Shown here piece by piece: positions 26,325 to 62,800 of a stretch of 64,000 nucleotides of DNA. The stretch covers positions 45,209,915-45,273,914 of the forward strand of contig NC_068990.1 of assembly GCF_001194135.2 (NCBI RefSeq). The letters are read 5' to 3'. A program made the position numbers and the translations under genes. How positions within the stretch are numbered: the stretch's first letter is position 1; each line of letters opens with the position of its first letter. The DNA comes from Octopus bimaculoides. Its lineage: Eukaryota. Below the pieces are notes generated by a model. It saw only the letters and a program-made list of their open reading frames with translations. It searched no databases and was not told the origin of the DNA.

Positions 26325-27019
26325 GTAAGTTGAATTCATAGACTTTTCATTCAAGAAACATTAGTGAAGTAATTTTTAATTAAAAAAAAATTTTTCTTCA
26401 TATTTAGTTTATGTTGCTTTGTTTCGTGAGTTCAAAAGCACATTAGGAGTTAACTTTATCTTCTTTTTTGTTATCTTTCTGGGATTGATAAAGTAAGTAC
26501 CTGTAATACAGTAGAAGGAGGGGGGGGGGTAATTCAGTTGACTATATCTACCCACCTTCAAGCACCAAGAAATGTGTAGCTGGATTGACACAACCATTAG
26601 AACATTAGGCAAAATGTTTCGTGGTATTTGTTCTAGCTCTTTACATTCTAAGTTCAAACCCTGCCAAGATCAATTTTGTCTTTCATCCTTTTGGGGTCAA
26701 TGATATCAACTAGTACCCTATCATCAAAATTGATGGCCTTGTGCTTAGTGGTATTTCGTCCATCTTTACATTCTGAGTTCAAATTCCACCGAGGTTGACT
26801 TTGCTTTTCATCTTTTTGGGGTTTATAAATTAAGTATCAGTGAAACACTGGGGTCAATGTAATCGACTAGCCCCCTCCCACAAAATTTCAGGCCTTGTGC
26901 CTATAGTAGAATGGATTATTATTTTTGTTCACTTCTGATTTATCTATGTGCTGTCTCAGCTCCATCTCACAGTCTAGAGACACAGCACTTTCCTCAACAC
27001 ATGGGCTGTCCCAAGTATT

Positions 27020-28612: not shown

Positions 28613-28840
28613 GTTGGCATCAAATGTTTGGTTTCAGTTAGATTTGATCTTGAATTCTCTGTAAAACAAATTTTATTTTATGTCTCCTCAAGCTTGTTTT
28701 ATGACTGTAGATTTTAGAATAATTTGAACAGCTACTGATATAATTGTTGCCTATTTTTATGTTGTATTAAATAGCTTTATGGAACAGATGTAGATAGAGA
28801 CTTCATTGACTTGTAATATTCTATGCAGTGTTGTATAATA

Positions 28841-29896
28841 CAAGGTGTCCCAAAAGTCACTGATGGGTTTCAATTTTTAATAACTTCCTTAACTTCACAA
28901 ATAAATGCACAAAATGTTGATACAATATAAAGGACATAATGGAAATTAATATGCACAAGTCAAATTTTGCAACACCACTACATCACATATGAAAAATGAC
29001 ATCACTTAAATGGCAGCCATTTTTGGCATTGAATGTGAAGGCCAGTTGACATTGCTGTAACGGGAGACTATTCTCTCTCCAAAGCACTGCCGTAGCAACT
29101 GCATTGTTTCTCTTGCAGTATGTGCAGTTGCCCCATCTTGCTGGAACCATGTGTGCGGTCTACTTTGAATGGCCTTTATGTTCCCCAGACTTGACTAGCT
29201 TGGATTTTTTCTTGTGGGGATATCTGAAAGAGAGGGTCTACATCAACAAACTGGAGACCCTGGTGCAACTGAAGGAGAACATCATAGAACATCATAGAGA
29301 AATCATAGAAGTGGAGTCTGAAACTCTTGAGGGTGTTATGGTGCAAGTTTTGGAAAGAGCAAGGGCATGCGAAGCTGAAAATGGTTGCCATTTAAGCAAT
29401 GTCATTTTTCATATGTGTTGTAGTAGTATTGCAAAATTTGACATGTACATATTAATTTCCATATGTCTTTTATATTCATCATCATCATCATCGTCGTTTA
29501 ACATCCGCTTTCCATGCTAGCATGGGTTGGACGATTTGACTGAGGTCTGGTGAACCAGATGGCTGCACCAGGCTTCAATCTGATTTGGCAGAGTTTCTAC
29601 AGCTGGATGCCCTTCCTAACGCCAACCACTCANNNNNNNNNNTTGGCAGAGTTTCTACAGCTGGATGCCCTTCCTAACGCCAACCACTCAGAGAGTGTAG
29701 TGGGTGCTTTTATGTGCCACCGGCACAAAGGCCAGTCAGGAGGTACTGGCAACGGCCACGCTCGAAATGGTGTATTTTACGTGCCACCCGCACAGGAGCC
29801 ATGATGATGATATTGTATCAAAATTCCATGCATTTATTTTTAAGTTAAGGAAGTTATTAAAAATTGAAACCCATCAGTGACTTTTAGAACACCCTT
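28841..29896 (+). mobile_element. Internally deleted Tc1/mariner element with ~185-bp TIRs and a nested retroelement tail
   Basis: TA flanks at 28839-40 and 29897-98; left TIR 28841-29024 mirrors 29378-29476 plus 29810-29896; transposase C-terminus WPLCSPDLTSLDFFLWGYLKERVY...RARACEAENGCHL. Confidence 0.9.
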
Positions 29897-30380
29897 TATA
29901 TAGGTGCAGCTTGTTCAAATGGGTAACAAGTTTGTTCCATAGTCTCCAGGTCCTAGGTTTGATCTCACTGCATTGCATTTGGGGAAAATGTCTCTTACCC
30001 TTGCCTTGGATCAATCTACTCCTTGGGAGTGAAGGTAGAATGTTTTTGTTCATAGCCCTTGGTTATTCTTGATCAATTAAGGATAACCTGGAGTTAAACA
30101 TCAATAACAAAAACTTGTGTAAGATTGTTGAACCATTGCTGATTCTTAGAATTGAACCTAAACATTTTGGGTTTCAAGATTTCATTCACATGAAATCATG
30201 ATATTCATCATCATCATCATCATTTAGTGCCTGTTATCCATGCTGGCATGAGTTGGATGGTTTGACGAGGCAAGCAGGAAGGCTGCACCAGATTCCAGTC
30301 TGATTTGGCATGGTTTCTACAGCTGGATGCCCTTCCTAACACCATCCACTCTGAGAGTACATGTATACCCTGTCCCCCCC

Positions 30381-33490: not shown

Positions 33491-33710
33491 NNNNNNNNNN
33501 NNNNNNNNNNNNNNNNNNNNNNNNNNNNNNNNNNNNNNNNNNNNNNNNNNNNNNNNNNNNNNNNNNNNNNNNNNNNNNNNNNNNNNNNNNNNNNNNNNNN
33601 NNNNNNNNNNNNNNNNNNNNNNNNNNNNNNNNNNNNNNNNNNNNNNNNNNNNNNNNNNNNNNNNNNNNNNNNNNNNNNNNNNNNNNNNNNNNNNNNNNNN
33701 NNNNNNNNNN
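33491..33710. other. Assembly gap (220 N); 10-N gaps also at 29633-29642 and 59584-59593
   Basis: N runs. Confidence 1.
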
Positions 33711-35297
33711 NATATATATATATATATATATATATAGTACTGCAGCATAATATAATGACTAGAGAACTTAAAAATTTCACTCACAAATTGTTAATCAATT
33801 ATAGGCATTGATAGAAGAAACTTGTCCAATGTGCTGCCAAGTGGGATTAAACCTGGAATCACTGAGTCAGGGAATAAGCTTCTTAGCCTCAGTGCCATAT
33901 CTTTGCTTGTATAAGTCTATGGCACAGAGGTAGGCTGACCAAACAAATCATTGGATCAGTAGTTCTAGCTGTAGCCATTCCATCTTGATTTTGGATCTTG
34001 CTGTCATTAAATATAGGGTTTAAGCCATGTGGTATCTATTTTGATAATGGTAAGTAGTTTATTGAAGGAGATTTAGCTGCTACATTGAGCACATCAAATG
34101 ATGGTATTGAAACTTTATCTCCTGGCAGCTGAATCTCTTCTCATTGCTGTTGTCATTGGTGTTTGTATCATTGGTGTTTCTCTTTATCTCTCACTCTCTC
34201 TCTCTCTCTGTCCTCATTTTTACTTCCATTTAGAAATTTCTTTTATTCTTTTCCTTATTTTTGTTTCTTTTTCTTTCTTATTTTAGTTTTCTTTCCTTTT
34301 CTTTTTTTAGTTTTCATTTATTTGTTTATTTGTAGACTATTGTGGATTGCTAAAATAGTAGAGCCAGAAACTCTATTTTGTTTACTGTCCCAATGTCTTG
34401 AATTCAAATTCCAAAGAAGCCAATTTTGTCTTTTATCTTCTTATTAAGTTGATATGATAATTAACTATTAGTATACTCAGTTTTATCTAGTTTCCTACAT
34501 ACCTTTTGTTCATCCAGTTTTCTGTATGAAAATTTCAACACCTCAAAAAAAACAAAAAAAAAATTAGAAGTAAATTTAACAATTTTTGTGTTTTTAAATG
34601 ATTAAAATGGCTCTTCTGTGAATTCATTGCTTCACTTCCAACCTCATGGTCTCAGATAATTTTCACTTGCTAGATAAATATAACTCTGAAATGATGATTT
34701 AGTTTATTTGGAAGAGGTCTTTTCGCAAGTCACATTGCCTCAATAAACTTAACATATCTCGCGACATTTCTCGGCAAAAATTAAGATTTGTATATAAAAC
34801 TGCTTTCTGCATTTAAAGGTAATGACAGTGTAAGTGGATACATCTGATTTCCACAGTAAAGGGGTTAATTATTCTGAGAGGTACAAGGAAGAGAAAGCTT
34901 CATGGCTTTTAAAATTTATCTTGAGGACAGAATAGCTTAAGTAATACAGGTAACAGATGTTGGATCCAGTAGAATTCATATTTCGCTTTTAGCATAAAAA
35001 ACCGTTATTTCCTTCATAGATAATTACCTTGTGATTTTTCAGTGACCATGAAAAGAATTTTAATTACTTTGAAATTCAACTTTGATATTTGTCATTCCAT
35101 TTCTTGATAGTTTACTTCAAAGACTCATTAATCCTTTTACTGCAGGAATTAGATGTATCCATTCAAAATTTCATTACTCTTAACTGCAGGAAGCAGTTTT
35201 ATAAATCAGTTTATCTTTTGTTGAGGAGTGTCATAGTTGAAACTATTTTTGTGTTGAGGTAGGTGCAAGGATAACTCTGTGGTAAGAAGCTTGTTTC

Positions 35298-36725: not shown

Positions 36726-37606
36726 CGAGTTGGTATCAAAAAGTTCTCAGACTAGTTATGTTTAATAAAAAATAGCTTACTTAAGTTTTAACATCATTTC
36801 TTTCAAAATACACCAGCAATACACCAGTCCCAGCCTTCCTGCCACTTTTGGAATCTGACCTGGAAGTCATTTTCTGTAAGCGAGTCAAGGACCTTTTGCA
36901 ATTTGCTCTTGATCTCAACAACAGTGTTAAAATGGCGACCTTTGAGCTGCATTTTCATCTTGGGGAAGAGATGGAAGTACACAAATGCTAAATTTGATGA
37001 ATAGGGCAGGTGCGGAAGCAATACCATGTTGTTTTTGGTGAGAAACACGAGTGAGGTGACAGGGTATGTTGTCGTTGTGAAGAATCCAATTCTTTGTACT
37101 CCACAGATTTGGTTCCTTTCACTGAATGTCCTCCCTCAAATGCTTCAAAATGCTGTTGATTGTCCTCCAACGATACTCATGCACAAGTTGATGAATTTTC
37201 TCCATATTTTTGGGGGTGACATTTGTGGCAGGTCTTCCAGATCAATCATCATCTTCCAGGGATGTTCTTCTGCTTTTGAAGCACTCATGCCACATGAAAC
37301 ATTATGTACTACCCATTGCCTCATTACTGTAAGCTTGTCAAAGCATGCTCAATGTCTCTGTAGCAGACTTCCCAAGTTTAACACAAAATTTCATGTTGGC
37401 TCTTTGTTCCAACTTCTTCATAACAAAAATCACAGATTACAGCATACATGTGAACACAAAAACACAAATTTCACAACTTACAAAGTAAACACTCGGCATG
37501 CTGCTTCATGAAGGTCACTGCTAGTTCTCACCATGTATGCAACTGTGTACTGCCATCTGTTGGTGCACTAAAGAACTAATCCAGGAAAGTTTTTGATACC
37601 ACCTTA
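36726..37606 (-). mobile_element. Internally deleted mariner transposon
   Basis: ~30-bp imperfect TIRs (CGAGTTGGTATCAAAAAGTT / AAGTTTTTGATACCACCTTA) with TA flanks at 36724-25 and 37607-08; minus strand encodes N-terminal EQRANMKFCVKLGKSATET...SGRP and C-terminal PHLPYSSNLA...LFPKMK..LKGRHF...WQEGWDWCI; central DD region missing. Confidence 0.92.
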
Positions 37607-47220: not shown

Positions 47221-49805
47221 CATCATCATTTAGCATCTGTTGTCCATGCTGGCATGAGTTGAACAGTTTGACTGGGCTGGCACACTGGAACGCTGCACCA
47301 GATTCCAGTCTGATTTGGCATGGTTTTCTACAGCTAGATGCCTTACCTAATGCCAACCACTCCGAGAGTGTAATGTGTGCTTTTACGTACCACTGGTACA
47401 GGTGCCATTTGCATGACATCAGGGTCCGTTTATGTACCACTAGCACAGGTGCTAATTTGTGTGACACCAGTATCTACCATGACTGCGATTTTGCTCACCT
47501 TGATGGTTCTTCTTCTCAAGCATGACATAATACCAAAGATCTTAGTTGTTGCCTCCATGAGGCCCAACACTCAAAAGAAACTCAGCCACTTTGCCTCCGT
47601 GTCGCCCAACGCTCAAAAGGAACTCAATCACCTTGCCTCCATGAGGCCCAACACTTGAAAGGAACTTAGTTACTTTGCCTCTGTGAGGTTCAACACTCAA
47701 AAGGAACTCAGCCACTTTGCCTCTGTGAGGCCAAACATTCAAAAGATGTTCTTTATGTGCCACCATGCACTTGGCTTGACAAGTCCTCTCAAGCACAGCA
47801 CATCGCCAAAGGTCTCGGTCACTAGTCATTGCTTCTGTAAGGCTTAAAGTTCACCACCTATTCACATGTCTTCTTGGGTCTACCTCTACCACAGGTTCCT
47901 TCCAAAGTTAGAGATCGGCACTTCTTTATACAGCTGTCCTCGTCCATATGCATCACATGACCATACCAATACAGTCATTTCTCTTGCATACCACATCTGA
48001 TTTCTCTTATGCCTAACTTTTCTCTCAAGATGCTTACACTCTGTTGAACATGCACACTGACATTGCACATCTAGCAAAGCATACTGGCTTCATTTCTTGC
48101 AAGTTTATGCATGTCCTCGGCTGTCATAGCCCATGTTTCACTGTCATGCAGCATTGCTGTTTGCACACAGGCATCAAACAATCTGCCTTTCACTCTGAGA
48201 GAGAGGCTCTTTGTTGCCAGCAGGGGTTGGAGCTCTCTGAACTTTGCTCAGTCTGATCTTATTCTTACAGCTACACTCTCAGAGCATTCACCTCCACTAC
48301 TAACTTGGTCACCTAGATAACGCAAGCTATCTACTATCTCTAGCGTGCTCCCTCTGGCAGTTGATGGAGTCTATTTTCTGCACATTTTCAGTGTTTATTG
48401 TACCTGTGTACCTTCCACATATAAAAGTTAGTCTCCCTGTTAACCTTCCTATGATGTTGCTGCCCCTTTTATATATCCAAAACTTAGACTGGCTGCATCT
48501 TATGGAGTTTCTGCCTACACCTTTTCTACAGATTGAGCAGGTCCATCTACTTCAAGGGATTTGTGATTTATCTGCCTTCCTACTTATTAAGACTTTGGTT
48601 TTTGCTAGGATAACTCTAAGGCCTTTTAATTCTAGACCTTGCTTCCATACCTGGAACTTCTTCTCTAGTTCAGCTATTCAGCTATAAGACCAAGGTCATC
48701 AGCATAGAGGAGCTCCCAGGAGCAGCCTCTCTTGAATTCTTCTGTTATTGCCTGGAGGACTTTGATGAACAAGAGGGGGCTGAGGACTGATCCTTGGTGA
48801 ATCCCTACTTGTACCCTGAATTCTTCGCTGTACTCATTGCCCACTTTCACCTTACTGGTAGCATCCCTGTATGAGGCTTGTATGGCTCTCACCAACCACT
48901 CATCTATCCTTAGTTTCCTCTATGATCACCAGATAAGGAATCAGTGGGGTCTCTGTCAAAAGCTTTCTCCAAGTCAACAAAAGCCAAATACAGAGGTTTA
49001 TCATTGGCTAGGTATTTCTCCTGAAGTTGCCTTACCAGAAATATAGCATCAATGGTGCTTCTACCTGGCACAAAACTAAACTGCATCTCATCTAGACTAA
49101 CTCCCTAATTAATTTGGCTATGACTCTCTCTCTCTAACTTTCATCACCCGATCCAACTATTTGATACTTCTGTAATTATTTCTGTCTAAGGCATCACCTT
49201 TATCTTTGTAGCAGTTGACTATGGTGCTGCTACACCAGTCATTGGGTATGACTCCTTCATGAACCACCTGATTTACAATACAGGTGGCTTGACCATAACC
49301 CAAACTGCCAGATATTTTAAGCATCTCAGCAGGGATTCCTGATGGGCCAAGAGCTTTCCCTTTCTTCATATCCTTAATTGCTTTATCTACCAGGATTTGG
49401 CAGGCTCTCTTCCTCTCATTCATTCTCCACATTCAGCAGTCTTTCATAATGGCATCTCTAAGCCTCTTTCTTTGCAGATTCATTAAAAGCAGGTGCACCA
49501 TCATCCATGCAGACACATTTCTCTCCTATGACATCACAGTTTTCTCTCACACACTGTCTTGCAATCTGAAATAATTCAGTTCTTTTGTCTTCATGACACT
49601 GAACATAGACAAACTTCTTCTCTGCTTTTCCTTTGGCTAGATATACCTGTCTCCTAGCTTCCCTTCTGGCTGTCTGATACAGTTCCCTGTTGCCCCTACT
49701 CTTCCAGGCCTGTTTCTTTGCTCTAATGGCCCTGTCTACAGTATTGTTCCACAACCACATTACCCTATGTGGAAGTCTGTTTGCTCACAAACTCTAACTT
49801 ACCAT
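47221..49805 (-). mobile_element. 5'-truncated RTE-clade LINE (~2.6 kb) with decayed RT ORF
   Basis: ORF pieces WLWNNTVDRAIRAKKQAWK, KKGKALGPSGIPAEMLK, QVGIHQGSVLSPLLF...WELLYADDL, post-RT region, 3' UTR and (GAT)n tail at 47221; stops and frameshifts. Confidence 0.93.
47549..47745. repeat. 42-bp tandem repeat, ~4.7 copies, inside the LINE 3' region
   Basis: TTGCCTC recurs at 47549, 47591, 47633, 47675, 47717. Confidence 0.92.
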
Positions 49806-50718: not shown

Positions 50719-50806
50719 AGTGAATTCAATTTTGTAAACATTATCATAGAACCGTTGGACTGTAACACTAATGCAGTCAAAATAGTTACCAGAGAAAACC
50801 AAAATG
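50719..50806 (+). CDS. TSC2: Tuberin exon w26 (GAP domain)
   Basis: TTGCAG acceptor; SEFNFVNIIIEPLDCNTNAVKIVTRENQN (TSC2 GQFNFVHVIVTPLD); donor G|GTAAGA; 88 nt, phase 0/1. Confidence 0.96.
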
Positions 50807-51444
50807 GTAAGAATTTCATGGTTTTCTCTTCGATTATTCTTGTTAAATTTGATTTTTTTTTTTTCTTAAATGAATTATACCAGATTCATATCATTATATT
50901 CTTTTATAAATTATGGTTTGCTTGTACTTTTTCAACTTAACCATTGGTAGCCTTAACAGTAATAGTAATAACTAGCAGTGGTAAATAAGAATAATAGTGA
51001 ATAACTAAAAATTCCATGGTTATTTTGAAAACTGTAAGATGATTTGAGGTTTATAAAGAACTATAGAATATGTAATTTGTTTTGAAATATATTTTTTCTG
51101 AAACAAATGATTTTTGAGTTAATGAAAAAGTTCATTTGTGCTGTAATGAAGATATAGTCGCAGGAGAGAACATCTTTGAACGTTATATCCTTTGTTATAC
51201 ACCTGTCACTCTTCTACCTTGAAGATTGTTATCTGTTAGTTTTAACTGGCATATCTGTCTATTATTCTGCTATGGTATGACTATCCTGTAGAGCATAGGT
51301 TCTCAAAGTGAGCGTTGCCGCCTCTCCAGGTAGGCGCTGGTGCTAAAGGGGGCAGTGGCAGGGGGACAGTAGAGAAAAAGGAGGCATTGGGAGGAAGGTA
51401 GTAGATTGGGAGATGCTATGAATTTATTATAATATTATTATAGT

Positions 51445-53118
51445 CATCATCATCGTCATCATTTAATGTCTTCTTTCCATGCTAGCATGGGTTGGATGAT
51501 TTGACTGAAGACTGGCGAACCAGATGGCTGCACCAGGCTTGAATCTGATCTGGCAGAGTTTCTACAGCTAGATGCCCTTCCTCACGCCAACCACTCAAGA
51601 GTGCAGTGGGTGCTTTTACGTGCCACCGGCATGAGGGCCAGTCTGGCGGTACTGGCAACGGCCACGCTCAAATGGTGTTTTTTATGTGCCACCTGCATAG
51701 GAATCCGTCCAGCAGCACTGGCAATGACCTCCCTCGAATGTTTTGTTCACGTGCCACCGGCACAAGTGCCAGTAAGGCGACACTGGTAATGATCACACTC
51801 AAATGGTGCTTTTTACGTGCCACTGGCATGGAAGCCTGAGAGCTGCTCTGGCAGTGATCACGCTTGGATGGTGCTGTTAGCGACTGGCACAGGTGCCAGT
51901 CATCGAATTTGGTTCAATTTCGATTTCACTTGCCCCAACAGGTCTTCGCAAGCAGAGTTTAGTGTCCAATGAAGGAAGGTTGGGATGGGTGCCAGTCGTC
52001 GAATTTGGTTTGATTTCGATTTCACTTGCCTCAACAGGTCTTCGCAAGCAGAGTTTTGTGTCCAAAGAAGGAAAGGTACGCATAAGTGGGCTGGCTACAC
52101 CCCTGGTAAAGGCCACGGGTTATGGTCTCACTTGTCTTGCCGGGTCTTCTCATGCACAGTATATTTTCAAAGGTCTCGGCCACTAGTCATTGCCTCGGTG
52201 AGGCCTAATGTTCGAAGGTCGTGCTTCACCACCTCATCCCAGGTCTTCCTGGGTCTGCCTCTTTCACAGGTTCCTTCAACTGCTAGGGTGTGGCACTTTT
52301 TCACATAGCTATCCTCATCCATTCTCGCCACATGACCATACCAGCACAATCATCTCTCTTGCACACCACAACTGATGCTTCTTAGATCCAACTTTTCTCT
52401 CAAGGTACTTACACTGTTGAGTATGCACACTGACATTACACATCCATTGGAGCATACTGGCTTCATTCCTTGTGAGCTTACGCATGTCCTCAGCAGTCAC
52501 GGCCCATGTTTCACTGCCATGTAGCATGGCTGGTCGTACACATGCGTCATACAGTCTGCCTTTTACTCTGAGCAAGAGGCCCTTTGTCACCAGCAGAGGT
52601 AAGAGCTCTCTGAACTTTGCCCAGGCTATTCTTATCGTAGAAGCTACACTTTCAGCGCACCCTCCCCCGCTACTGACTTGGTCACCTAGGTAATGGAAGC
52701 TATCAACTACTTGTAGTTTTTCTCCCTGGAAGGTGACAGAAGCTGTTCTCTGCACATTTTCAGTGTTTATTGCTCCTGAGCATTTACCACATACAAAACG
52801 TAACTTCCTAGTTAACCTTCCTTTGATATTACTGCACCTCTTATGTGTCCTTAGCTTGCACTGGGTGCATCTTATAGAGTTTCTACCTACGCCTTTTCTA
52901 CAGATCGAGCAGGGTCATCTACCTGAAGGGGTTTGTGGTTTGTCTACCTTCCTACTTATTAGGACTTTGGTTTTAGTTAGGTTGACTCTAAGGCCCTTCA
53001 ATTCTAATTTTTGCTTCCACACCTGAAACTTCTCCTCTAGTTCTAATAGTGACTCAGCAATTAGAGCAAGGTCATCAACATAGAGGAGCTCCCAGGGGCA
53101 TCCTGTCTTGAATTCCTC
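51445..53118 (-). mobile_element. 5'-truncated RTE-clade LINE (~1.67 kb) nested in the hAT MITE
   Basis: PWELLYVDDL, VVDSFHYLGD, KGRLYDACVR.AMLHGSETW, WYGHVARM...GRPRKTWDEVV; (GAT)n tail at 51445; TATAGT flanks at 51439-44 and 53119-24. Confidence 0.92.
51895..52080. repeat. 96-bp tandem duplication in the LINE 3' UTR
   Basis: GCCAGTC[A/G]TCGAATTTGGTT...GGTCTTCGCAAGCAGAGTTT units start at 51895 and 51991. Confidence 0.9.
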
Positions 53119-53867
53119 TATAGTATTGTATACAAATTATATAATTTTGTATTAAATATCAAATGATTCATAGTATATATAAATTAGTAAAATATAAAAT
53201 ATTTATTTATACATAAAAATAGTGGTGGGGTGTTGAGGGTATTATGTGGCCATGAGGTGGGGGGAGCAAAAAGTTTGAGAACTTTTGCTGTAGAGCTTTA
53301 ATAAATCTTAATGCACTGTATTCATAACATCCTTGGCTAAGCTTGAACCCATAGTCAAAGTGAATGCAGTATTGTAGCTACTCCATTAAGTTGAGGATTC
53401 TAAAATAATTTTATTCTGAATAATAATTCTTTCTGATATAAGCAAAAGGCTTGAAATTTGGTGTGAGAGAGTTAATCGATTACATTGACCCCAGTGCTCA
53501 ACTGGTACTATTTCATTGACCCCAAAAAGATGAAAAGCAGTCAATCATGGCAGAATGAACTCAGAACGTAAAGATAGTCAAAATGCTTGGCAACATTTCA
53601 TTCAGCATGCTTAACAATCCTGTCAGCTTGCTTCCTTAATAATAATAATAATAACAACAACAACAATTTCAAATTTTGGCAAGAGGCCAGCAATTTTAGG
53701 GGAAAGAGGAGACTAATACAGAATTACTCTCAATAATAATTCTAATATAGACACAAAGCCTGATATTTAACAGCAGGGGTTTAGTCGATTACATTGACCC
53801 CAGTGCTCAACTGGCACTTACTTTATTGACCCCAAATAGTAATAATAATAATAATAATAATAATATG

Positions 53868-54168
53868 ATTAAACCTTGGGAGAGGCATTATGCCGGTAAT
53901 AAATGCACGCACTGGTTCAGTCCTTTATTAATTTATATAGTTTTTTGTTAAATTATTTCATTGCACTCTTGCAATCTCTTCAGTAACTTGTCTCTCCACT
54001 TCCATTTATTTTGAATAAATAAATAAATAAATGGAAGTAGAGAGACAAGTTACTGAAGAGATTGCAAGAGTGCAATGAAATAATTTAACAAAAAACTATA
54101 TAAATTAATAAAGGACTGAACCAGTGCGTGTGTTTATTACCGGCATAATGCTTCTCCCAAGGTTTAAT
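53868..54168. repeat. 301-bp near-perfect palindrome (144-bp arms, 13-nt loop)
   Basis: 53868-54011 is the reverse complement of 54025-54168 with 4 mismatches by manual comparison, all transitions. Confidence 0.97.
54049..54089 (+). ncRNA. Minimal type I hammerhead-ribozyme-like motif (mirror copy on - strand at 53947-53987)
   Basis: GTTA-CTGAAGA-G-ATTGCA-AGAG-TGCAAT-GAAA-TAATT-TAAC: stem I GTTA/TAAC, CUGANGA box, 6-bp stem II, GAAA box. It lacks the C that normally pairs with G10.1, and stem III is minimal. Confidence 0.4.
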
Positions 54169-55291
54169 TGTATTTCTTTCAACACACGTATCCACGTCAA
54201 GAATCTTGCACACGAAATAATAATATGCCCTGATGCATATAATAATAATAAGCCCAGGCAGTGTCTCTCATGGCTTTTGATCTTAATTGATTGGAAGTGT
54301 TATCATGTACATGTTTCGTTTTGGTATAAAAGTTGGGCTACAGCAAATATTCTGCTCAGTACCACAGATTTGCTTGCCAGTTGCTTGACCTTAACCAGTT
54401 GAGCATGTCTCTTAGTGGCTGACAATATACGCATCTCTGATCATGAGCAGAAGTAGTGGAGGAGCATCATAATCATATGCTGAGGAATTCTTTGGATTTG
54501 AATAATTCACTTCTGGAAACATATGTGTTTTGTTCATGGTCCTTAAACAAACTTTATTCAGGGACCTTTTGAGCAGAATGGGCTACTCGACCTGAAGAAA
54601 ATTCTAACTGATCCCCACCTGCAAGGTCATGTGCTGTTTTATTAATGAGATCACCATATCGCACATGTATGGTTCTGATGCATGTACCTGGTGTACATTA
54701 GACAGGTAGTCATGATGGGTATATTGGGCTTCATATATTTGTACCCCTGTGTCACTTCAATAGCGTGTGCTGCTCTCTCACTCAATAATAAAGGCTTCAG
54801 ATTTTGTCTGAGGCCAATCATTTCAAGGGGAAGGTATTAGATGATTCCATCAAACCCAATTTTATTTTCCGTTTGGTTTTTACATGTTCTACTACTGCAT
54901 CCTTGCTAACATAGTTCTATTCCATTTGCACAACAAAAATTTTGACATCTCAAAAAAATAACTGGAAAGTGAGTCTAACAATTTTTGTGTTTTTAAAATT
55001 ACTGAAAATGATTTTGCTGATGTAATTACTTTAGTTTCCACACCCATTCTTGGATCAAGATGCTTGCTACACTAGTAAAATTCCATAAAATAAAAATGAT
55101 AAAAATAAATGACTTTATGGATTATTTTCTATTGCAATTTCAGTAATTTACAATTCTGACTGTAAATATCTTCTTTATTTTAGTATATATGTAATGTGTG
55201 TGTTATATATAATATAGCTTTATTTTGATATCTAATGTAAATGTAATAAGTTAACTAACAATTGTTTTTCTTGTTTTCTTTCTTCTCTTAG

Positions 55292-55318
55292 CTGCTGTCA
55301 AAGACGTTATAACGTCTG
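55292..55318 (+). CDS. TSC2: Candidate 27-nt symmetric (phase 1/1) microexon w27 adding AAVKDVITS
   Basis: ACTAAC branch-like motif at 55254-55259, ~30-nt pyrimidine tract, TAG acceptor, TG|GTAAGA donor; no stop in the required frame. No homology or transcript support available here. Confidence 0.65.
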
Positions 55319-55367
55319 GTAAGATTCTACATTTTTATTTTTATTTTTACTTCTCTTACTTTATCTA

Positions 55368-55750
55368 CTGTATATACTTGTAGATAGGTCACACCAGTGG
55401 ATAGGTCGCACCCTAAGTTTGGGGTTGTCAAAGTAGGTATTTGCGGTTGACTTGCAGATAGGTCGCACTATAATCTGGGGAGTTACATGGCCCTTTTTTT
55501 AATGTAAATGCAACTAATATTTGTTAGATATTTTCAAATATTCACCTTTATTTCAAAACTTTGCTTACAAATATTAAGACATTTTCATGGAAGTGACTTT
55601 ATGAAAGTAATCTAATTGATAAATCAACTCAACTACTGATACGTTGCTGTCTACTTCAGTTCCTTGTGATATTGAGTGGATAGGTTGCACTCCTGATTTG
55701 TATTGAAATTTTTGGTAAAAAAAGTGCAACCTATCTGTGAGTATATATGG
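55368..55750. mobile_element. pogo/Tc2-like MITE
   Basis: TA-flanked imperfect TIRs CTGTATATACTTGTAGATAGGTCACAC / GTGCAACCTATCTGTGAGTATATATGG, with internal repeats of the ATAGGT[CT]GCAC motif. Confidence 0.75.
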
Positions 55751-56843
55751 TATTCAGTTGTTATTTTTAAATCAAAACCTATTTATAAAGTTTTTTTCTT
55801 TCTTTTCAAAGTCTTGGTCACAAGTAGAAAAGCAGTACTTGTGGGTGTTTACAGGGCATTTGAAAGTCGTGAGAGGAAGAGATAGAGTTATGTCAGATTG
55901 AAAACCTGGCTTGAATACTTACAACAGAATAGATTCCACTAAAGGCACATTTAGTTACGTGGTGGTGATTGTTGTTTAGTCCCAGGTCATCTCTGATCTG
56001 GCAGATTTATAGTCAAAGGCACTCCCTGTGTGCAAAACCTGTTTTTTTCTTTTATTTTTGTTTATCAAACTTAGAGTATTTAGAACTAGATTGCCTGATG
56101 TTCTGTTTCTAAATGGAGAGATTTTATCGCTGTTTTAAGCAGATCAAGTGATGGTGTACAGGTGTATTCATTAACTTGCTATTGCAGTTAACTCGTTAGC
56201 ATTCAGATTACTCTGTCAAATGTAATGCTTATTTATTCACATTGTTTTAATTTAATCATGCATTATCTTGTAACTTCAAGATTTTGGTGATGTGAGTCTG
56301 CTTATTTTTAAAATGACACTGTAGGGTAAGTGTGAGAGGCCAGATCTGGATGATTTGAACATAAAAGAAGTAGAATATTTGAGACTGACACAGCCAGTTT
56401 AAATGATAAAAGGCTAACTATACATCAGTCCTGATTCAACAAAAAAACTTTAATCGTAAAGTATTCCATCTGTGACATCTTGTCATTTATTCAGGCCCAG
56501 TACTGGATAATTTTTAGATTTATTCTTACACGTATAGGATGTAAATTGAGTGAGACCTGGCTGCTGTTTCTAGCAAACTAAGTAGCCACCTGAAGGTTCC
56601 CCTCATTGAATGGTTTGACAGGAGCCAGAGGACTGCAGCAAGCTCTACTGTCTGCTTTGGCATGGTTTCTGAATGCCCTTCCCAGCACCATCCACTTTAA
56701 AGATAAACATACTGGATACTTTTTATATGACACCAGTACAATTAATTAAAGACAATTTTTTTAATTATATAAATACTCTCATTTTACTATCATGTTCCTC
56801 TCAGGAAATAATTCCATTTCACTTATTGTTTTCTTTCTCTTAG

Positions 56844-56932
56844 ATATTGCTGAATCTTTGGGACAAGAATCCAAGACAATTTCCGACGATAAATTAGCTG
56901 CTTTGGTTCGGCTAATGGCAATCCACTGTAAT
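56844..56932 (+). CDS. TSC2: Tuberin exon w28
   Basis: CTTAG acceptor; (D)IAESLGQESKTISDDKLAALVRLMAIHCN (TSC2 [20 protein letters not shown]); donor GTAAGT; 89 nt, phase 1/0. Confidence 0.95.
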
Positions 56933-58016: not shown

Positions 58017-58214
58017 TTGGCATCTATGGTCCTTTGGAGACAGAAAAGTAACCCTAAAGATCCTTTTGCATCTAATTGGTTGGAACGTCTAAGACACATG
58101 AAACGACTACGTAGTAAAGTAATGGAGAAATTGAAAACAGCTGCCGACGAGAGGGCTGGCTATGATCGGACTGAAGCAAAAGTTTTTCATGAAGATTTCA
58201 CGGACTATTCCTGA
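58017..58214 (+). CDS. TSC2: Tuberin terminal coding exon w29
   Basis: TTTCAG acceptor; LASMVLWRQKSNPKDPFASNWLERLRHMKRLRSKV...FHEDFTDYS* (TSC2 YPSKWIARLRHIKRLR and C-terminal EDFTEFV); TGA stop. Confidence 0.96.
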   Translation: MASMVLWRQKSNPKDPFASNWLERLRHMKRLRSKVMEKLKTAADERAGYDRTEAKVFHEDFTDYS

Positions 58215-58502
58215 AGATTTAATCTTTCTATAGCACACTTCTCCTTCTTCCATTCTACATCAGTCATTTTTTTTCCTCTCCCTTTCTCTCTCTCTCTGTT
58301 TCTCTCTATCTCTCTCTCATATCTGTCAACCCTCTCCTTTTTATTTGCATCATTACCATTTTCCATCTAGAAATCATTCTTGTTGCCAAAATGCTGGTGA
58401 TGTGTTTTCGTTTTTTTTTTTCCCTGTCTCACCAGTACCTCACCTTACATATATATATATATATATGCGTATATAAATATATATATATACATATATTTGT
58501 GT

Positions 58503-58593
<91 letters not shown>

Positions 58594-59069
58594 TATATAT
58601 ATATATGTATGTATATGATATGACTCTTTTTTTGAGAGCGTGGCTGATTTGAACGTGTGTCTTCTAATTAATGAAAGAAGAGAGTAAACGAGCTCAGCAA
58701 GTCTGCTAGACTTTTCAACCCTACTCCAGCTAATTCTGTAACCATGGAAATAGGCAAAAATGGTTGTGTGACATGTCTGTCTAAATAGAACTGACCCCAG
58801 AACCTTTAACTGTGGTTGATATTTGTTTGTTTTGTTTTTCTTACATCTCTCTTTCTCTCTCAACTTGTACCCTCCCATCACCCCTTCTGTCACCCACCCC
58901 CTTCTATAAAAAAAAGCAAACCTTCCCCTCACCCCACCCTAACCACTGTATGCCCCCAAACCATTCAGAAACTTCTCTATTCTATCTGACCCTGGAGCAA
59001 ATGAAGGAATTGAGTTCTTTCTTTGCTTTTAGTTGATGAGAATTAAAAAAAGGAAAGACAAATGAAAAA

Positions 59070-59689
59070 TGTGTATATGCATGCATGTATATATGTGTGT
59101 GTTTACATAAATATATATATATATGCATATTTAAACATACATACATATACATACATGTTTACATATAAAAGGATTAGCCAAATTCTTGTCAACTTTTCCT
59201 GCTTCTTTTCTTACAAATTTTGTACATAATATCATATATATATGTATGTATGTGTGTATATATACATATATGTATGGGTGTATATACATATATGTGTGTA
59301 TATACATGTGTGTATATACATATATGTACATATACATATATATACATATTCATATATATACATGTGTATATATATATGTATATATATATATATATATATA
59401 TACACATGTGTGTATGTACACACACATATATATATATATATGTATGTACACATATGTGTATATGTATGTATATACACATGTATGTATATACATATAAATG
59501 TATATATATGTATATATGTACATATATACACATGTATATATATACGTATATATACAAATATATGTATGATATACACATATATANNNNNNNNNNTATATAT
59601 ATATATATACATACGTATATACACATATATGTATGTATATACACATATATGTATGTATATTCATATATGTATGCATGTATATACATATA

Positions 59690-59751
<62 letters not shown>

Positions 59752-59870
59752 TATATATGTACTATGTGTGTGCATGTCTAAGTATACATATACACTCATG
59801 CACACACACACACATATATATATATATATAATATGTAGGTATGTGTACATCACACACATAACATAAATAA
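59070..59870. repeat. Compound (TA)n/(CA)n/(TG)n low-complexity tract (other microsatellites near 5090, 17699, 18480, 38229, 58513, 60730)
   Basis: Directly visible dinucleotide-derived sequence. Confidence 0.95.
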
Positions 59871-62800
59871 CACAGCAGAATGGAAACAAACAAACTCAAA
59901 GTTTAAAGATAATACAGAAAAATAAAGAGACCTGTATAAAAAAAATATTTCCTCCTCCCTGCTAATTTTACCACTGGAAAGATGTCAATACTTACTATTT
60001 TGATTAGCTTTCAACCCTTAAGTTCTGTTTTTTTAATTTTTACCAGAAAATATTGATATCTTTTTACATTGGATATAGAAATTGTAAAAATGAGCATAAA
60101 TGAAAATATAATGAAGACAAAGTATTGAAACAGAAATCTAGCTCTAAAGTTTATAACTAAATTTCTGTTAGTGTATGTGTGGCTAGTTTGTACATATAGT
60201 GTATGTGTGTGTGTGTGTGTGTTTTGTATAGAATAAAAAAGTATGTAAATGTATATCTATGTATGTTTGTGTCTATATGAATATATATATATGGGCTAGC
60301 GTATGTATGCATAAATGACTGTTCTATGTTGATATATATATATATACACACACACACACATATTTATACACACATACATAGTTTTAATGTATGTATTGCT
60401 ATTACAATAATGTATCTATATGGAAGTACTCTGTGTATGTATGTGTGTGTGTGTGTGTGCGTGTTTTTTTTTATGTATGTATAATTATATATATGTGTGT
60501 ATATTCGCACATACATGAACATAATTGTACCATGTAGATTGATATATATATCTTCGTGTTTACATTGACATGCCCTTGTATAAATATAATTTATATCTAA
60601 GTGTTATCATGTAGTATGTATGCTATATATATTTTGTACTTCCATGCATAATAGTTTATATATGTGTGGGTGTGTAATGTTTCTAAATATATAAAACTTG
60701 ATTATGTTATGTTCAAGAGTATCCATTTTGTGTGTGTACACACACACACACACACACACACATACATGCATATATATATATATAGGTGTGTGTGTGTATA
60801 TATATACACACACACACACACATACACACACATGCGATAGTTGAATAAATGGTTTATATATGCATGATGTATTGAATGTGCAGATGTAGTTAATATGTAT
60901 ATATTTCATCTACCTTAATTTGTTCTAAACTTGAAAAGGAAAAAAAAGATTTTTATTTAAATTAAATTACGACGAAACCCTGATTACTAATTCAAATTTA
61001 TTAAGTGTAAAAAAAATTTTCTACTGACTTGTCATAATTATTTTATTAAAAAAAAATACCAGTTGAATATTTTTATCACTTTAAACCTCTCCTTCCCACA
61101 TGCTATCCATGCCAACTGTGTATGTAGAGAGAAAACAGATAAACAAACAACCCCAGGAAAAGACACTCCCTCTTTTTCCTTTCCTTTTTTTTTTTTCACA
61201 GATTAAAAAGATATTTTCCCTGTTATTATTTTATTTGCTATAACCAAATTTGAACCTCTTAAGTTCGTTATGGTTAAATAACAGCAACGAGACTCCTATC
61301 TCATTATTCTTTTCTTCTTCTACTTGTATATGCTACTTCACTTGAAGAGATGGATGAAATTAGAGGGTAGGCGGAATATGAAAAGGAAAGCCACATGGGG
61401 AGGGTGGGAGTATTGGAATAAAATTACTTTAAAATTTTTGACATGTAGTCTTAAAAGGACTTCCAGATATGATCTCCAAATTGAATACAGTATTAATGTT
61501 TTGTTATTGGATCTCCCCACCCCAATATATTTATTATACATATATATAATTATGTGTGTGTGTGGGTGTGTGTATGTGTGTGCGTGTGTGCATATATGCT
61601 TTTTCCTTTTCTTTTGTGCTTAAACAATCACATAATCACCCCTCTCTTCCCTCCTCCTCTCTTTCACTTTCTCTCTTTCTCTCTGCCTCTTTTCTTCATT
61701 TCCATGATTGATGGACAAGTATTGCAGCTTCCTCTTGAAATGATATCTGTATTTAGTATGTTTCCATTGTTCCTTAAAATTTGGGAGTAAGAAATTACCT
61801 AACTATTTTCATTCAATGTTGTTTTTATTTTATTTATTTATTTTTTTTCAAACTAATCCCCCTTTAAATATTTACTTTATCTTAATGAATCACTAGTGAA
61901 AGGCTAATGAAATATGAATGCTGATTATCTGTATATCAGGTACATCAGCAAGGCTACTCTCTTGTAATATCAAATGGAACAAATTCCAAGTGAATCTAAT
62001 GTGTCTCCTCCTTGTTAACACTATGATTAGACTAAACAGTAGCAAGAGTAAAGATTGATGTTTAGTGACATAGTGGCATATACTTTATATAAAAACAAAA
62101 AAACATAGATAAACATGACACTGTAAGGGAGAAGATGTGTAATGCAAAATGAAGGGTTAGGTTTATTTTATATTTTGCCATTAACCTTGATAATAAAGTT
62201 ATTTAGTTTATCAGTTACTCCAACAAATGAATTTAGTTAAGTGTTTGTGGAATGGTTATCCTATTTTTGAGAAGACTAAAGTTTTTAAGGTTTAATTTTG
62301 TGTGTATTTATAATAATATATGAATATATCTTACAGAAAATGTGTTGGTATTAAAGTTATTGAAAGCTGTTTGGGTGAAGTTTATGTACGACAATATCAC
62401 TTTTGTTATCTACAGTATATTAAATATTAACACAAAATTAAGTATATGAAGCTAAGTTTAAACTGACAGGAATTTGAACTGTAGAAAAACACTGAGTATA
62501 TTTGGTATAATTAGTTTAGTTGCACTTACTATAACTTTGATTTAATTGAAAACTAATTTAGTTATGTTTTCTGAAAATAGAACAGGCAATGATAGAAGAA
62601 ATATTTGTTCTTATTACTAGGATTAAATAACAGATATTGTTTTTTCATTCTCTTCACTCCTTTTCATATCAAGAGTGGGTACATAATTGTTCAAATAGTT
62701 AATGATATAGAACATTTAATTTATTTTTGAACTCCATAATTTTATAGTTTTTGTAAAAAGAGAGAAAAGAAAAAGAAAAATACATGAAAGAAAAGTTATT

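What the first reader, a model, noticed from the sequence alone, without database searches (positions are those of the whole stretch)
53868..54168. 301-bp near-perfect intronic palindrome in the TSC2 GAP-domain region
Seen: two 144-bp arms around a 13-nt loop with only 4 mismatches. On the TSC2 sense transcript three would be G-U wobbles and one an A-C mismatch, so the pre-mRNA can form a ~145-bp duplex about 1.1 kb upstream of the microexon candidate. Established: long dsRNA, and A-C mismatches in particular, are ADAR substrates, and coleoid cephalopods edit RNA extensively. Inference: a recent fold-back duplication, possibly an inverted Penelope-like pseudo-LTR, creating an editing hotspot, small-RNA source or cruciform.
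Basis: partly seen in the sequence, partly recalled or inferred. Interest (0 to 1): 0.7.

Follow-up and report, generated by a model that had tools for sequence, protein, structure and literature searches.

The report
Intronic hairpin-forming palindrome in TSC2
A real, evolutionarily young 301-313-bp near-perfect palindrome sits deep inside an intron of the TSC2 (tuberin) gene; it is most likely a small fold-back transposon copy or a local inverted duplication, it can fold into a roughly 150-bp RNA duplex, and nothing here shows that it has a function.

Summary
The arms are 53868-54011 and 54025-54168 (144 nt, 4 mismatches) around a 13-nt spacer, and they extend to 150 nt (53862-54174) if a TG/TG double mismatch is tolerated. 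Chance is excluded (RNA fold -243.6 kcal/mol, z = -36.5).

TSC2 lies on the + strand. The palindrome sits about 3.06 kb into the 6.0-kb intron between two Rap-GAP-coding exons (50719-50806 and 56844-56932).

All arm differences are transitions with no indels. Arm divergence (2.8-4.0%) is about a fifth to a quarter of intron divergence to a related species (14%), so the structure is young and probably not an assembly artefact.

Its origin is unresolved:
- The ends allow TTAA or TA target duplications, as in palindromic "fold-back" MITEs. These sites are themselves palindromic, so they do not discriminate.
- No second copy exists in the 64-kb window or in any searchable collection.
- A local fold-back duplication seeded at the central (ATTT)/(AAAT) run remains a serious rival.
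- The Penelope pseudo-LTR idea has no support (no hammerhead motif).

Editing, small RNAs and cruciform formation are plausible but untested. This is an ordinary kind of feature, of low interest.

The parts
53862..54011 (+). Left arm of the palindrome. The outer 6 nt (53862-53867) pair only if a T-G/G-T double mismatch is allowed, and 53862-53865 (AATA) are also in register with the upstream (TAA)n run.
54012..54024 (+). 13-nt spacer TGAATAAATAAAT. It lies inside an (AATA)4.8 microsatellite (54014-54032), whereas the left arm ends in only (ATTT)2. An alternative register gives a 5-nt loop (TGAAT) plus two extra AAAT units on the right side. On the sense RNA the loop region carries overlapping AAUAAA hexamers.
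54025..54174 (+). Right arm (core 54025-54168), the reverse complement of the left arm. It contains A54039, the single A-C mismatch, in a UAG context.
53869..53872 (.). TTAA at the outer end of the left arm. It is a candidate target-site duplication, either TTAA or the inner TA at 53870-71. A further TA at 53864-65 is another candidate. These sites are palindromic and cannot be told apart from arm sequence.
54164..54167 (.). The matching TTAA at the outer end of the right arm. The alternative TA sites are 54165-66 and 54171-72.
53735..53865 (+). Context: a truncated copy of a dispersed SINE-like repeat (about 53735-53839), followed by an (AAT)10 microsatellite (53835-53865) that abuts the palindrome.
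50719..50806 (+). Upstream TSC2 exon (SEFNFVNIIIEPLDCNTNAVKIVTRENQN), with an AG acceptor at 50717-18 and a GT donor at 50807-08. It is part of the Rap-GAP domain.
56844..56932 (+). Downstream TSC2 exon (DIAESLGQESKTISDDKLAALVRLMAIHCN), with an AG acceptor at 56842-43 and a GT donor at 56933-34. The Rap_GAP profile continues through it.
55292..55318 (+). It has a polypyrimidine tract plus AG acceptor and a GTAAG donor. Its phase is compatible with both neighbouring exons, and inclusion would insert AAVKDVITS. It starts 1,118 nt downstream of the palindrome. Its use is not shown.
   Evidence: phase worked out

Best explanation
The palindrome is most likely one copy of a small, non-coding, palindromic ('fold-back') DNA-transposon derivative. 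This is the MITE type in which the whole element is two long terminal inverted repeats around a short AT-rich centre. It would have inserted at a TA or TTAA site at the edge of a (TAA)n microsatellite, in the middle of a 6-kb TSC2 intron, after this species split from its sequenced relative.

**How it behaves**
- It has no coding capacity (shown).
- It is transcribed passively as part of the TSC2 pre-mRNA because it lies in an intron in the sense orientation. The position is shown; the transcription is inferred.
- The intronic RNA can snap back into a roughly 150-bp, almost perfect duplex (shown by folding).
- Such a duplex is the standard substrate for promiscuous A-to-I editing by ADARs. A54039 (A-C mismatch, UAG context) is the best single candidate site. 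The excised intron could also feed Dicer. Both points are inferred from established ADAR and dsRNA biology and are not tested.
- At the DNA level it is an AT-rich short-spacer palindrome capable of hairpin or cruciform extrusion (inferred).

**Likely effect.** It is about 3.06 kb from the upstream splice site and about 2.7 kb from the downstream one (1.1 kb from a possible microexon). Its net effect on TSC2 is most likely neutral.
For: **The structure is real and is not an artefact of chance**
- establish the palindrome and its folding.
- All 4-6 arm differences are transitions and there are no indels.
- Two TG/TG double mismatches look like independent CpG-to-TpG decay in both arms.
- This is the signature of evolution after formation, not of sequencing or assembly error.

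**It is young**
- Arm-arm divergence is 2.8-4.0% (Kimura two-parameter (K2P) distance 0.029-0.042).
- Intronic divergence to related-species contigs L001/L002 is 14.2% (K2P about 0.16).

**It is non-coding**
- Only ORFs of at most 49 codons cross the arms, with no Pfam or database relatives.

**The ends fit a transposon**
- They read ..ATG-A-TTAA-ACCTTGGG...CCCAAGGT-TTAA-T-TG.. .
- TTAA (piggyBac-like) or TA (Tc1/mariner-like) duplications fit in three registers. No longer duplication fits any register.

**Comparable elements are known**
- Whole-element fold-back MITEs with TA or TTAA targets are an established class: PALTA1/2/4_CE, PALTTAA1/3_CE, Hairpin, Mirza (PMC3814204).
- Tc1/mariner, piggyBac and MITE insertions are reported as recently active in Octopus vulgaris (PMC13282606).
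- Mariner-like remnants occur in this same window.

**The arm is not copied from nearby sequence**
- It has no similarity to anything else in the 64-kb window.

**The dsRNA criterion is met**
- It meets the published criterion for ADAR substrates, and A54039 has the preferred context.
Against: **No second copy was found anywhere.**
- There is none in the window, including a search for the 20-nt terminus with 3 mismatches allowed.
- There is none in the protein collections that do hold octopod-like Logan contigs.
- There is none in metagenome, prokaryote-genome or viral contigs.
- The defining multi-copy property of a transposon family is therefore untested. These searches had little power for a short non-coding animal repeat.

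**The target-site duplications do not discriminate.** TA and TTAA are palindromic and common in this AT-rich DNA, so they cannot be separated from arm sequence.

**Complementarity runs past the TTAA.** It continues for 5 of 7 further positions, which would happen by chance about 2-5% of the time if TTAA were the true end.

**The termini match no transposon in the window.** They do not resemble those of the mariner-like element at 28.8-29.9 kb.

**The CpG argument fails.** A higher inferred ancestral CpG content of the arm (observed/expected 0.74-0.95, against 0.25 for the window) is not significant. In the window, 14-26% of 150-nt windows have at least 3 CpG.
Confidence: 0.5

Rival explanations
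1. The palindrome is a local fold-back (hairpin-primed or template-switch) inverted duplication of unique intronic sequence. A nascent or broken 3' end in the (AAAT)n run annealed to the complementary (ATTT)2 a few bases upstream and copied about 145-150 nt of its own strand. It then rejoined the original template at ..AAT|TGTATT. One arm is therefore ancestral intron and the other is its copy.
For: - The centre is exactly the short self-complementary microsatellite pair that such priming needs: ATTTATTT ... AAATAAAT with a 5-nt TGAAT loop in one register.
- No unambiguous target-site duplication exists.
- No other copy of the arm was found anywhere.
- Complementarity runs 6 nt beyond the TTAA into what looks like the end of the (TAA)n run.
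- A 3-nt microhomology (AAT) links the spacer end and the outer end of the right arm.
Against: - Template-switch events of this length (about 145 nt), inserted precisely next to their template, are much rarer than transposon insertions in repeat-rich animal genomes (general knowledge, not tested here).
- The observed centre needs two extra AAAT units to be added afterwards.
- A 3-nt AT microhomology is expected by chance.
- The absence of other copies is weak evidence, because no cephalopod genome could be searched at the DNA level.
Confidence: 0.3
2. The palindrome is an assembly artefact: a de Bruijn-graph or gap-closing 'hairpin' in which the assembler turned back through a short inverted repeat. 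The real locus would have only one arm.
For: - The scaffold is a gapped assembly, with N runs at 29633-42, 33491-33711 and 59584-93.
- At least one gap is flanked by duplicated sequence.
- The centre is a short self-complementary microsatellite, where graph traversal can flip strand.
Against: - The arms differ at 4-6 positions, all transitions and mostly CpG-type. Artefactual arms built from the same reads would be identical.
- The 2.8-4% difference is too high to be two haplotypes of one arm.
- The right arm joins a unique right flank that continues to the next exon rather than retracing the left flank.
- No N run lies within 5 kb of the palindrome.
Confidence: 0.05
3. The palindrome is a functional RNA element that is maintained by selection. 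It could be a hairpin-RNA/endo-siRNA locus, or an intronic 'editing inducer' that recruits ADAR to neighbouring TSC2 exons or influences inclusion of the 27-nt candidate exon 1.1 kb downstream.
For: - On the sense strand 5 of 6 mismatches are G-U wobbles that preserve the helix. The sense hairpin is slightly more stable than the antisense one (-243.6 versus -236.9 kcal/mol).
- Hairpin-only matches to many miRNA models appear in Rfam.
Against: - The G-U bias is not significant (5 of 6, one-sided p = 0.11). It is equally explained by C-to-T bias on the non-template strand.
- All Rfam matches are far below gathering score, hit unrelated plant and animal families on both strands, and reflect only 'perfect hairpin'.
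- The arms match no gene that could be a target.
- The structure is younger than the species split, so it is not conserved.
- It is more than 1 kb from any splice site.
Confidence: 0.05
4. The palindrome is two inverted pseudo-LTRs of a Penelope-like retroelement. A more general version is two copies of one retroelement fragment inserted head to head.
For: - Penelope-like elements are present in octopus genomes (PMC13282606) and can have inverted terminal repeats.
- Reverse-transcriptase fragments lie in the same intron, at 52315-52755 (-) and 48674-49760 (-).
Against: - There is no hammerhead-ribozyme match at E <= 1 in 52.5-55.5 kb, and none at gathering score in the window.
- The nearest reverse-transcriptase fragment is 1.1 kb away and is separated by SINE copies.
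- The arm shares no sequence with those fragments or with anything else in the window.
- A 13-nt spacer leaves no internal region.
Confidence: 0.03

Closest known systems
Palindromic / fold-back MITEs with TA or TTAA targets (PALTA1/2/4_CE, PALTTAA1/3_CE, Hairpin, Mirza; cited in PMC3814204), and MADE1-type mariner derivatives
   Same: - The whole unit is two long inverted repeats around a short centre.
- It is about 300 bp, AT-rich and non-coding.
- Its ends are compatible with TA or TTAA duplication.
- It lies in an intron and forms a long hairpin when transcribed.
   Different: - No second copy and no autonomous partner could be shown.
- The duplication is ambiguous.
- There is no sequence similarity to any named family. 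No repeat library was available to test this, so the names are recalled or cited from literature, not matched.
Inverted-repeat SINE/Alu-type intronic dsRNA that is hyper-edited by ADARs
   Same: - It is an intramolecular reverse-complement pairing within a pre-mRNA intron.
- It far exceeds the >=50 nt / >=80% identity criterion used across metazoans including octopus (10.1101/2020.01.19.911685).
   Different: - Here the two arms are 96-97% complementary and only 13 nt apart, rather than two separate repeat copies hundreds of bases apart at 70-90% identity. One search lists 13 inverted pairs of that looser kind (spacers 147 nt to 4.7 kb, identity 70-92%) in this window.
- Editing itself was not observed.
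Palindromic AT-rich repeats (PATRRs) and other short-spacer palindromes that extrude cruciforms and break
   Same: It is a near-perfect palindrome a few hundred bp long, about 33% G+C, with an AT-rich centre and a short spacer.
   Different: - No instability, polymorphism or rearrangement is shown.
- The 13-nt asymmetric centre may already be a stabilising change.
Drosophila-type hairpin-RNA (hpRNA) endo-siRNA loci
   Same: It is a long, near-perfect inverted repeat that could be diced into siRNAs.
   Different: - hpRNA arms derive from, and target, a specific gene. These arms match nothing.
- There is no evidence of its own promoter or of small RNAs.

Membership tests
Fold-back / palindromic MITE (non-autonomous class II transposon) | Terminal inverted repeats | tested here: met
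   The arms are 144-150 nt at 96-97% complementarity and make up the whole unit.
Fold-back / palindromic MITE (non-autonomous class II transposon) | Small size and no coding capacity | tested here: met
   The unit is 301-313 bp. ORFs crossing the arms are at most 49 codons and have no Pfam or database relatives. The only hits from the representative search are spurious matches to bacterial repeat proteins.
Fold-back / palindromic MITE (non-autonomous class II transposon) | Target-site duplication flanking the element | tested here: inconclusive
   TTAA (53869-72 / 54164-67) or TA fits in two other registers. All are palindromic, so they cannot be separated from arm sequence. No duplication of 5 bp or more fits any register.
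Fold-back / palindromic MITE (non-autonomous class II transposon) | Multiple dispersed copies with different flanks | not testable with these tools
   There are zero further copies in the 64-kb window. No collection on hand allows a DNA search of a cephalopod genome. The scans that were possible found nothing.
Fold-back / palindromic MITE (non-autonomous class II transposon) | Termini shared with an autonomous element of the same genome | tested here: inconclusive
   The only transposase-bearing element with intact ends in the window (mariner-like, 28838-29899) has unrelated termini. The rest of the genome was not available.
Penelope-like element pseudo-LTR | Hammerhead-ribozyme motif in the terminal repeat | tested here: not met
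   An Rfam search at E <= 1 over 52500-55500 returned only miRNA-hairpin models, one Listeria sRNA and one snoRNA. No hammerhead was found. Nothing reached gathering score in the whole window.
Penelope-like element pseudo-LTR | Repeat flanks a reverse-transcriptase / GIY-YIG coding region | tested here: not met
   Only 13 nt lie between the arms. The neighbouring ORFs have no Pfam hit.
ADAR hyper-editing substrate (intramolecular pre-mRNA dsRNA) | Reverse-complement alignment of >=50 nt at >=80% identity within +/-2 kb on the transcribed strand | tested here: met
   The duplex is 150 bp at 96%, with a 13-nt spacer, on the TSC2 sense strand. The criterion comes from 10.1101/2020.01.19.911685.
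ADAR hyper-editing substrate (intramolecular pre-mRNA dsRNA) | Clustered A-to-G differences between RNA reads and genome | not testable with these tools
   No RNA-seq data were on hand.
microRNA precursor (any Rfam family) | Score at or above the family's gathering threshold | tested here: not met
   The best match is MIR2630 at 92.8 bits against a threshold of 144. About 15 unrelated families match on both strands, driven by structure only.
hpRNA / endo-siRNA locus | Arms homologous to a target gene, and 21-22-nt small RNAs | tested here: inconclusive
   No homology of the arms to anything was found. Small RNAs are not testable here.
Cruciform-prone AT-rich palindrome (PATRR-like) | Near-perfect palindrome of several hundred bp, short spacer, AT-rich | tested here: met
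   The unit is 313 bp, the arms are 32-33% G+C, and the spacer is 13 nt and AT-rich. DNA hairpin energy is -161 kcal/mol. Extrusion or instability in vivo is not testable here.

The most novel reading that the evidence does not exclude
The hairpin could be a selected sense-strand RNA element rather than a neutral scar. For example, it could be an intronic 'editing inducer' that recruits ADAR to the TSC2 pre-mRNA, or a structure that modulates use of the phase-compatible 27-nt candidate exon 1.1 kb downstream. Helix-preserving G-U substitutions, rather than A-C mismatches, would then have been tolerated on the transcribed strand. The evidence does not exclude this, but the G-U bias is not significant and the structure appears younger than the split from the nearest sequenced relative.
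Probability: 0.04. Interest if true: 0.6.

Novelty: new member of a known kind. Interest (0 to 1): 0.2.

Why it matters
The consequences are modest.
- If real and transcribed, this would be one of the longest and most perfect intramolecular dsRNAs a pre-mRNA can carry. It would be a convenient natural test substrate for ADAR hyper-editing, intron-derived siRNA production and palindrome stability in an animal lineage known for heavy RNA editing.
- Its presence or absence among close relatives would date it and reveal how it formed.
- For TSC2 itself no effect is expected, because the palindrome lies more than 1 kb from every splice site and encodes nothing.
- Repeat-rich genomes contain many inverted-repeat hairpins, so on its own this would not surprise a specialist.

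Tried and rejected
1. **Other copies of the arm in the window.** A word-7 BLASTN search and a 20-nt terminus search with 3 mismatches found none.

2. **Relatives through translated ORFs in the 5.8-billion-protein collection.** That collection does hold genomic contigs of a related species (P0001/L001). The 92-aa ORF reaching into the right flank and the 42-aa arm ORF gave nothing. As a result, no protein near the palindrome could be used to pull the orthologous intron.

3. **Exhaustive HMMER search with the arm-encoded 31-mer.** It returned 4 hits. The three examined are bacterial repeat proteins with a PW-K-D-YAGN motif whose scores add up over repeats; the fourth had no aligned stretch. All were rejected as spurious.

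4. **Exact-pattern scans.** Two arm 21-23-mers against JGI metagenomes, and one each against prokaryote genomes and viral contigs, gave 0 hits. This was expected, because these collections do not target animal DNA.

5. **Rfam.** Only sub-threshold hairpin look-alikes appeared.

6. **Reconstructing an 'empty site'.** I tested whether the right flank continues the truncated SINE on the left. It does not align with the 3' half of the SINE. The right flank is unique in the window.

7. **CpG content as a clock for 'recent arrival'.** The ancestral arm looks CpG-richer than background, but 14-26% of 150-nt windows are as rich. This was rejected as evidence.

8. **Strand bias of mismatches as evidence of selection on the RNA.** It is not significant.

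9. **Comparison with the mariner-like element in the window.** The termini are unrelated.

10. **Identifying the species of the Logan/ENA runs through the literature.** No paper cites those accessions.
Full report
**1. The observation**

Reading 53700-54350 shows the palindrome directly. The repeat finder reports arms 53862-54011 and 54025-54174, 150 nt, 96% complementary, 13 nt apart.

- 53997C/54039A
- 53905G/54131T
- 53904T/54132G
- 53884G/54152T

Just outside these arms there is a second T-G/G-T pair (53866-67 / 54169-70). Four more complementary bases follow, and then complementarity ends.

The + strand folds into one uninterrupted hairpin:

| Molecule | Energy (kcal/mol) | Control |
|---|---|---|
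| + strand RNA | -243.6 | shuffles -60.1 +/- 5.0, z = -36.5 |
| + strand DNA | -161.2 | z = -37.3 |
| - strand RNA | -236.9 | z = -33.8 |

Chance is excluded. No other long, high-identity, short-spacer inverted repeat of complex sequence exists in the window. The other long 'inverted repeats' are TA/CA-type microsatellites near 58.4-59.5 kb, or pairs of dispersed repeats at 70-92% identity with spacers of 147 nt to 4.7 kb.

**2. Gene context**

Stop-free + strand segments from 40 to 58 kb, when concatenated, match human tuberin. The PDB matches are 7dl2 and 9ce3, at E = 4e-60 and 5e-60, over tuberin residues 1411-1642 of the 7dl2 chain. They also contain a full Pfam Rap_GAP domain (profile positions 1-184 of 185, E = 1e-37).

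The palindrome lies between two exons with canonical splice sites:

| Exon | Peptide | Acceptor AG | Donor GT |
|---|---|---|---|
| 50719-50806 | ..EFNFVNIIIEPLDCNTNAVKIVTRENQN | 50717-18 | 50807-08 |
| 56844-56932 | DIAESLGQESKTISDDKLAALVRLMAIHCN | 56842-43 | 56933-34 |

The Rap_GAP match runs through both exons into the next one at about 58020-58208. 'Intron in the GAP-domain region, sense strand = + strand' is therefore correct.

The intron is 6,037 nt. The palindrome starts 3,055 nt from the donor and ends 2,669 nt before the acceptor.

It has a polypyrimidine tract plus AG and a GTAAG donor. Its phase is compatible with both neighbouring exons, and inclusion would add AAVKDVITS. It begins 1,118 nt after the palindrome. 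Its use was not tested.

**3. Anatomy**

- **Composition.** The arms are 32-33% G+C.
- **Centre.** The spacer TGAATAAATAAAT lies in an (AATA)4.8 run (54014-54032), while the left arm ends in only (ATTT)2. In another register the loop is 5 nt (TGAAT) and the right side carries two extra AAAT units. The centre has therefore probably changed by slippage since formation.
- **Left flank.** The palindrome abuts an (AAT)10 microsatellite (53835-53865). This follows a truncated copy (about 53735-53839) of a SINE-like repeat that occurs at least eight times in the window.
- **Right flank.** It is unique in the window.
- **Ends.** They read ..AATA-TG-A-TTAA-ACCTTGGGAGAGG ... CCTCTCCCAAGGT-TTAA-T-TG-TATT.. 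.
- **Target-site duplications.** A systematic scan of all boundary registers finds only TTAA, TAA/TTA, TA, AT and TG as possible flanking direct repeats, and nothing of 5 bp or more. TTAA and TA are palindromic and lie inside the complementary region, so they neither prove nor exclude a duplication.

**4. Age and mutation pattern**

All 4 differences (6 with the 150-nt arms) are transitions, and there are no indels.

The two TG/TG double mismatches are most simply explained as CpG dinucleotides present in both arms that each decayed to TpG. This is an inference. Every such change is a C-to-T on the + strand, which is the non-template strand of TSC2. That is why the sense RNA keeps G-U wobbles rather than A-C mismatches.

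The bias is not significant. It is 5 G-U to 1 A-C (one-sided p = 0.11), and 2-4 of 2-4 CpG events fall on one strand.

Arm-arm divergence is 2.8% (4/144) to 4.0% (6/150). Two Logan contigs from a related species (L001 and L002, runs SRR11869390 and SRR11869385) align colinearly to window 25115-26667. They differ by 14.2% in the non-exonic part and by 4.0% in the exon.

Barring conversion between the arms, the palindrome is therefore about one fifth to one quarter as old as that species split. This predicts that the relative lacks it, at least in this form.

**5. What it is not**

- **Not a coding element.** ORFs across the arms are at most 49 codons, with no Pfam match and no relatives. The four hits of the exhaustive search were rejected as spurious: the three examined are bacterial repeat proteins matched through a short repeated motif, and the fourth had no aligned stretch.
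- **Not a known RNA family.** About 15 unrelated miRNA models match the perfect hairpin on both strands, all far below their gathering scores. Nothing in the whole window reaches a gathering score.
- **Not a demonstrable Penelope-like pseudo-LTR.** There is no hammerhead motif, no internal region, and no similarity to the reverse-transcriptase fragments in the intron.
- **Not a derivative of the mariner-like element at 28838-29899.** That element's termini (TA|CAAGGTGTCCCAAAAGTCAC..) are unrelated.
- **Unlikely to be an assembly artefact.** Artefactual arms would be identical, whereas these differ by evolution-like transitions. The right arm also joins a unique flank that leads on to the next exon. 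Only reads can settle this.

**6. Origin: two live hypotheses**

*(a) A fold-back MITE.* MITE families that are 'essentially foldback structures' with TA or TTAA targets are well documented: PALTA and PALTTAA families, Hairpin, Mirza (PMC3814204). Tc1/mariner, piggyBac and MITE insertions are reported as recently active in Octopus vulgaris (PMC13282606). The size, AT-richness, lack of coding capacity, TA/TTAA-compatible ends and the lack of any local source for the arm all fit.

*(b) A local hairpin-primed or template-switch inverted duplication.* The centre is exactly the short self-complementary (ATTT)/(AAAT) pair such an event needs. No unambiguous duplication exists. Complementarity runs a few bases beyond the TTAA. 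No second copy was found.

The tools at hand cannot search a cephalopod genome at the DNA level. The protein-based routes found nothing near the palindrome, so the two cannot be separated here.

On prior frequency, transposon insertions vastly outnumber 145-nt template switches in repeat-rich animal genomes. That prior rests on my own knowledge. On that basis I rate the possibilities as follows:

| Explanation | Probability |
|---|---|
| Fold-back MITE | ~0.5 |
| Local inverted duplication | ~0.3 |
| Assembly artefact | ~0.05 |
| Functional RNA element | ~0.05 |
| Retroelement-derived | ~0.03 |

The remaining ~0.07 is left unassigned.

A CpG-content argument for 'recent arrival' was examined and dropped as non-significant.

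**7. How it most likely works**

- **Shown.** It sits in the sense orientation in a TSC2 intron and can form a 150-bp duplex with five G-U pairs and one A-C mismatch.
- **Editing (inferred from established ADAR biology).** Such a duplex exceeds by far the criterion that marks A-to-I editing regions across metazoans including O. bimaculoides (reverse-complement alignment >=50 nt, >=80% identity, within +/-2 kb; 10.1101/2020.01.19.911685). It would therefore be edited promiscuously.
  - The duplex has 100 adenosines, and 69 of them have a 5' U or A.
  - A54039 is the single A-C mismatch and lies in 5'-UAG-3'. This is the preferred neighbour and mismatch context (PMC12940819). It is the best single predicted site, and editing there would close the helix with an I-C pair.
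- **Other inferred properties.** The excised intron hairpin could be diced. The DNA could extrude a hairpin or cruciform at its AT-rich centre.
- **Not tested.** None of these inferred behaviours was tested.
- **Effect on TSC2.** The nearest splice signals are more than 1 kb away, so an effect on TSC2 expression is not expected.

**8. Verdict**

The Penelope suggestion is unsupported, and the choice between 'fold-back duplication' and 'fold-back transposon' is open.

This is a new instance of a familiar kind of feature, and its interest is low. It is a tidy natural substrate if someone wants to look at hyper-editing or palindrome stability in this lineage.

Noticed in passing
window 55292-55318 (+): A 27-nt candidate cassette exon lies in the same intron. 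It has a strong polypyrimidine tract plus AG acceptor and a GTAAG donor. Its phase is compatible with both neighbouring TSC2 exons (G|CT..TCT G|AT), and inclusion would insert AAVKDVITS between ..TRENQN and DIAESLG.. inside the Rap-GAP region.
   Followed up: partly
window 28838-29899: A mariner-like DNA transposon remnant has roughly 90-110-nt terminal inverted repeats at 88-89% identity, flanked by TA. It carries a transposase C-terminal ORF (29104-29520, ..CSPDLTSLDFFLWGYLKERVY..). A second mariner-like C-terminal ORF lies at 36803-37048 (-). Neither is recognised by Pfam at E <= 0.01.
   Followed up: partly
window 29590-29690 (N run 29633-29642): A 10-N gap is flanked on both sides by the same roughly 45-nt sequence (ttggcagagtttctacagctggatgcccttcctaacgccaaccactca). 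This looks like a gap-closing duplication inside a very abundant dispersed repeat, whose translated motif LAEFLQLDALPNANHSESV recurs at about 47.3, 51.6 and 57.5 kb.
   Followed up: no
window 6642, 12044(-), 17814, 26638(-), 35348(-), 45520, 53440, 53735: There are at least eight copies of a roughly 230-nt SINE-like repeat (..GTCGATTACATTGACCCCAGTGCTCAACTGGTACTTATTT..GAACTCAGAACGTAAAG..). Some carry (TAA)n/(CAA)n tails. Two partial copies sit in tandem just upstream of the palindrome.
   Followed up: partly
whole window; intron 50807-56843: There is strong CpG depletion. Observed/expected is 0.25 over the window and 0.36 in the intron, at 35% G+C. This is consistent with germline cytosine methylation of this gene body. 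Both inferred CpG losses in each palindrome arm are C-to-T on the non-template strand.
   Followed up: partly
window 48674-49760 (-) and 52315-52755 (-): Reverse-transcriptase-like ORF fragments of non-LTR retroelements lie antisense to TSC2 (RVT_1 at 27 bits, just under the cut-off). One is in the intron upstream of exon 50719-50806, and the other is in the same intron as the palindrome.
   Followed up: partly
window 54014-54032 (+): The hairpin loop and inner stem carry four overlapping AAUAAA hexamers on the sense RNA. These form a potential cryptic intronic polyadenylation signal, although most of it would be sequestered in or beside the stem.
   Followed up: no
window 58400-59900: A very long compound (TA/CA/TATG-type) microsatellite tract containing a 10-N gap (59584-59593) follows the exon at about 58020-58208 (the last TSC2-matching segment mapped here). 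It accounts for all the other 'long inverted repeats' listed for the window.
   Followed up: no
L001/L002 (Logan SRR11869390, SRR11869385) and L003 (ENA ERZ26693861): Genomic contigs of a close relative are colinear with window 25115-26667 at about 85-86% DNA identity. A contig from a more distant relative matches at 73-78% in exons and has shorter introns. These runs are the natural place to look for the orthologous intron.
   Followed up: partly
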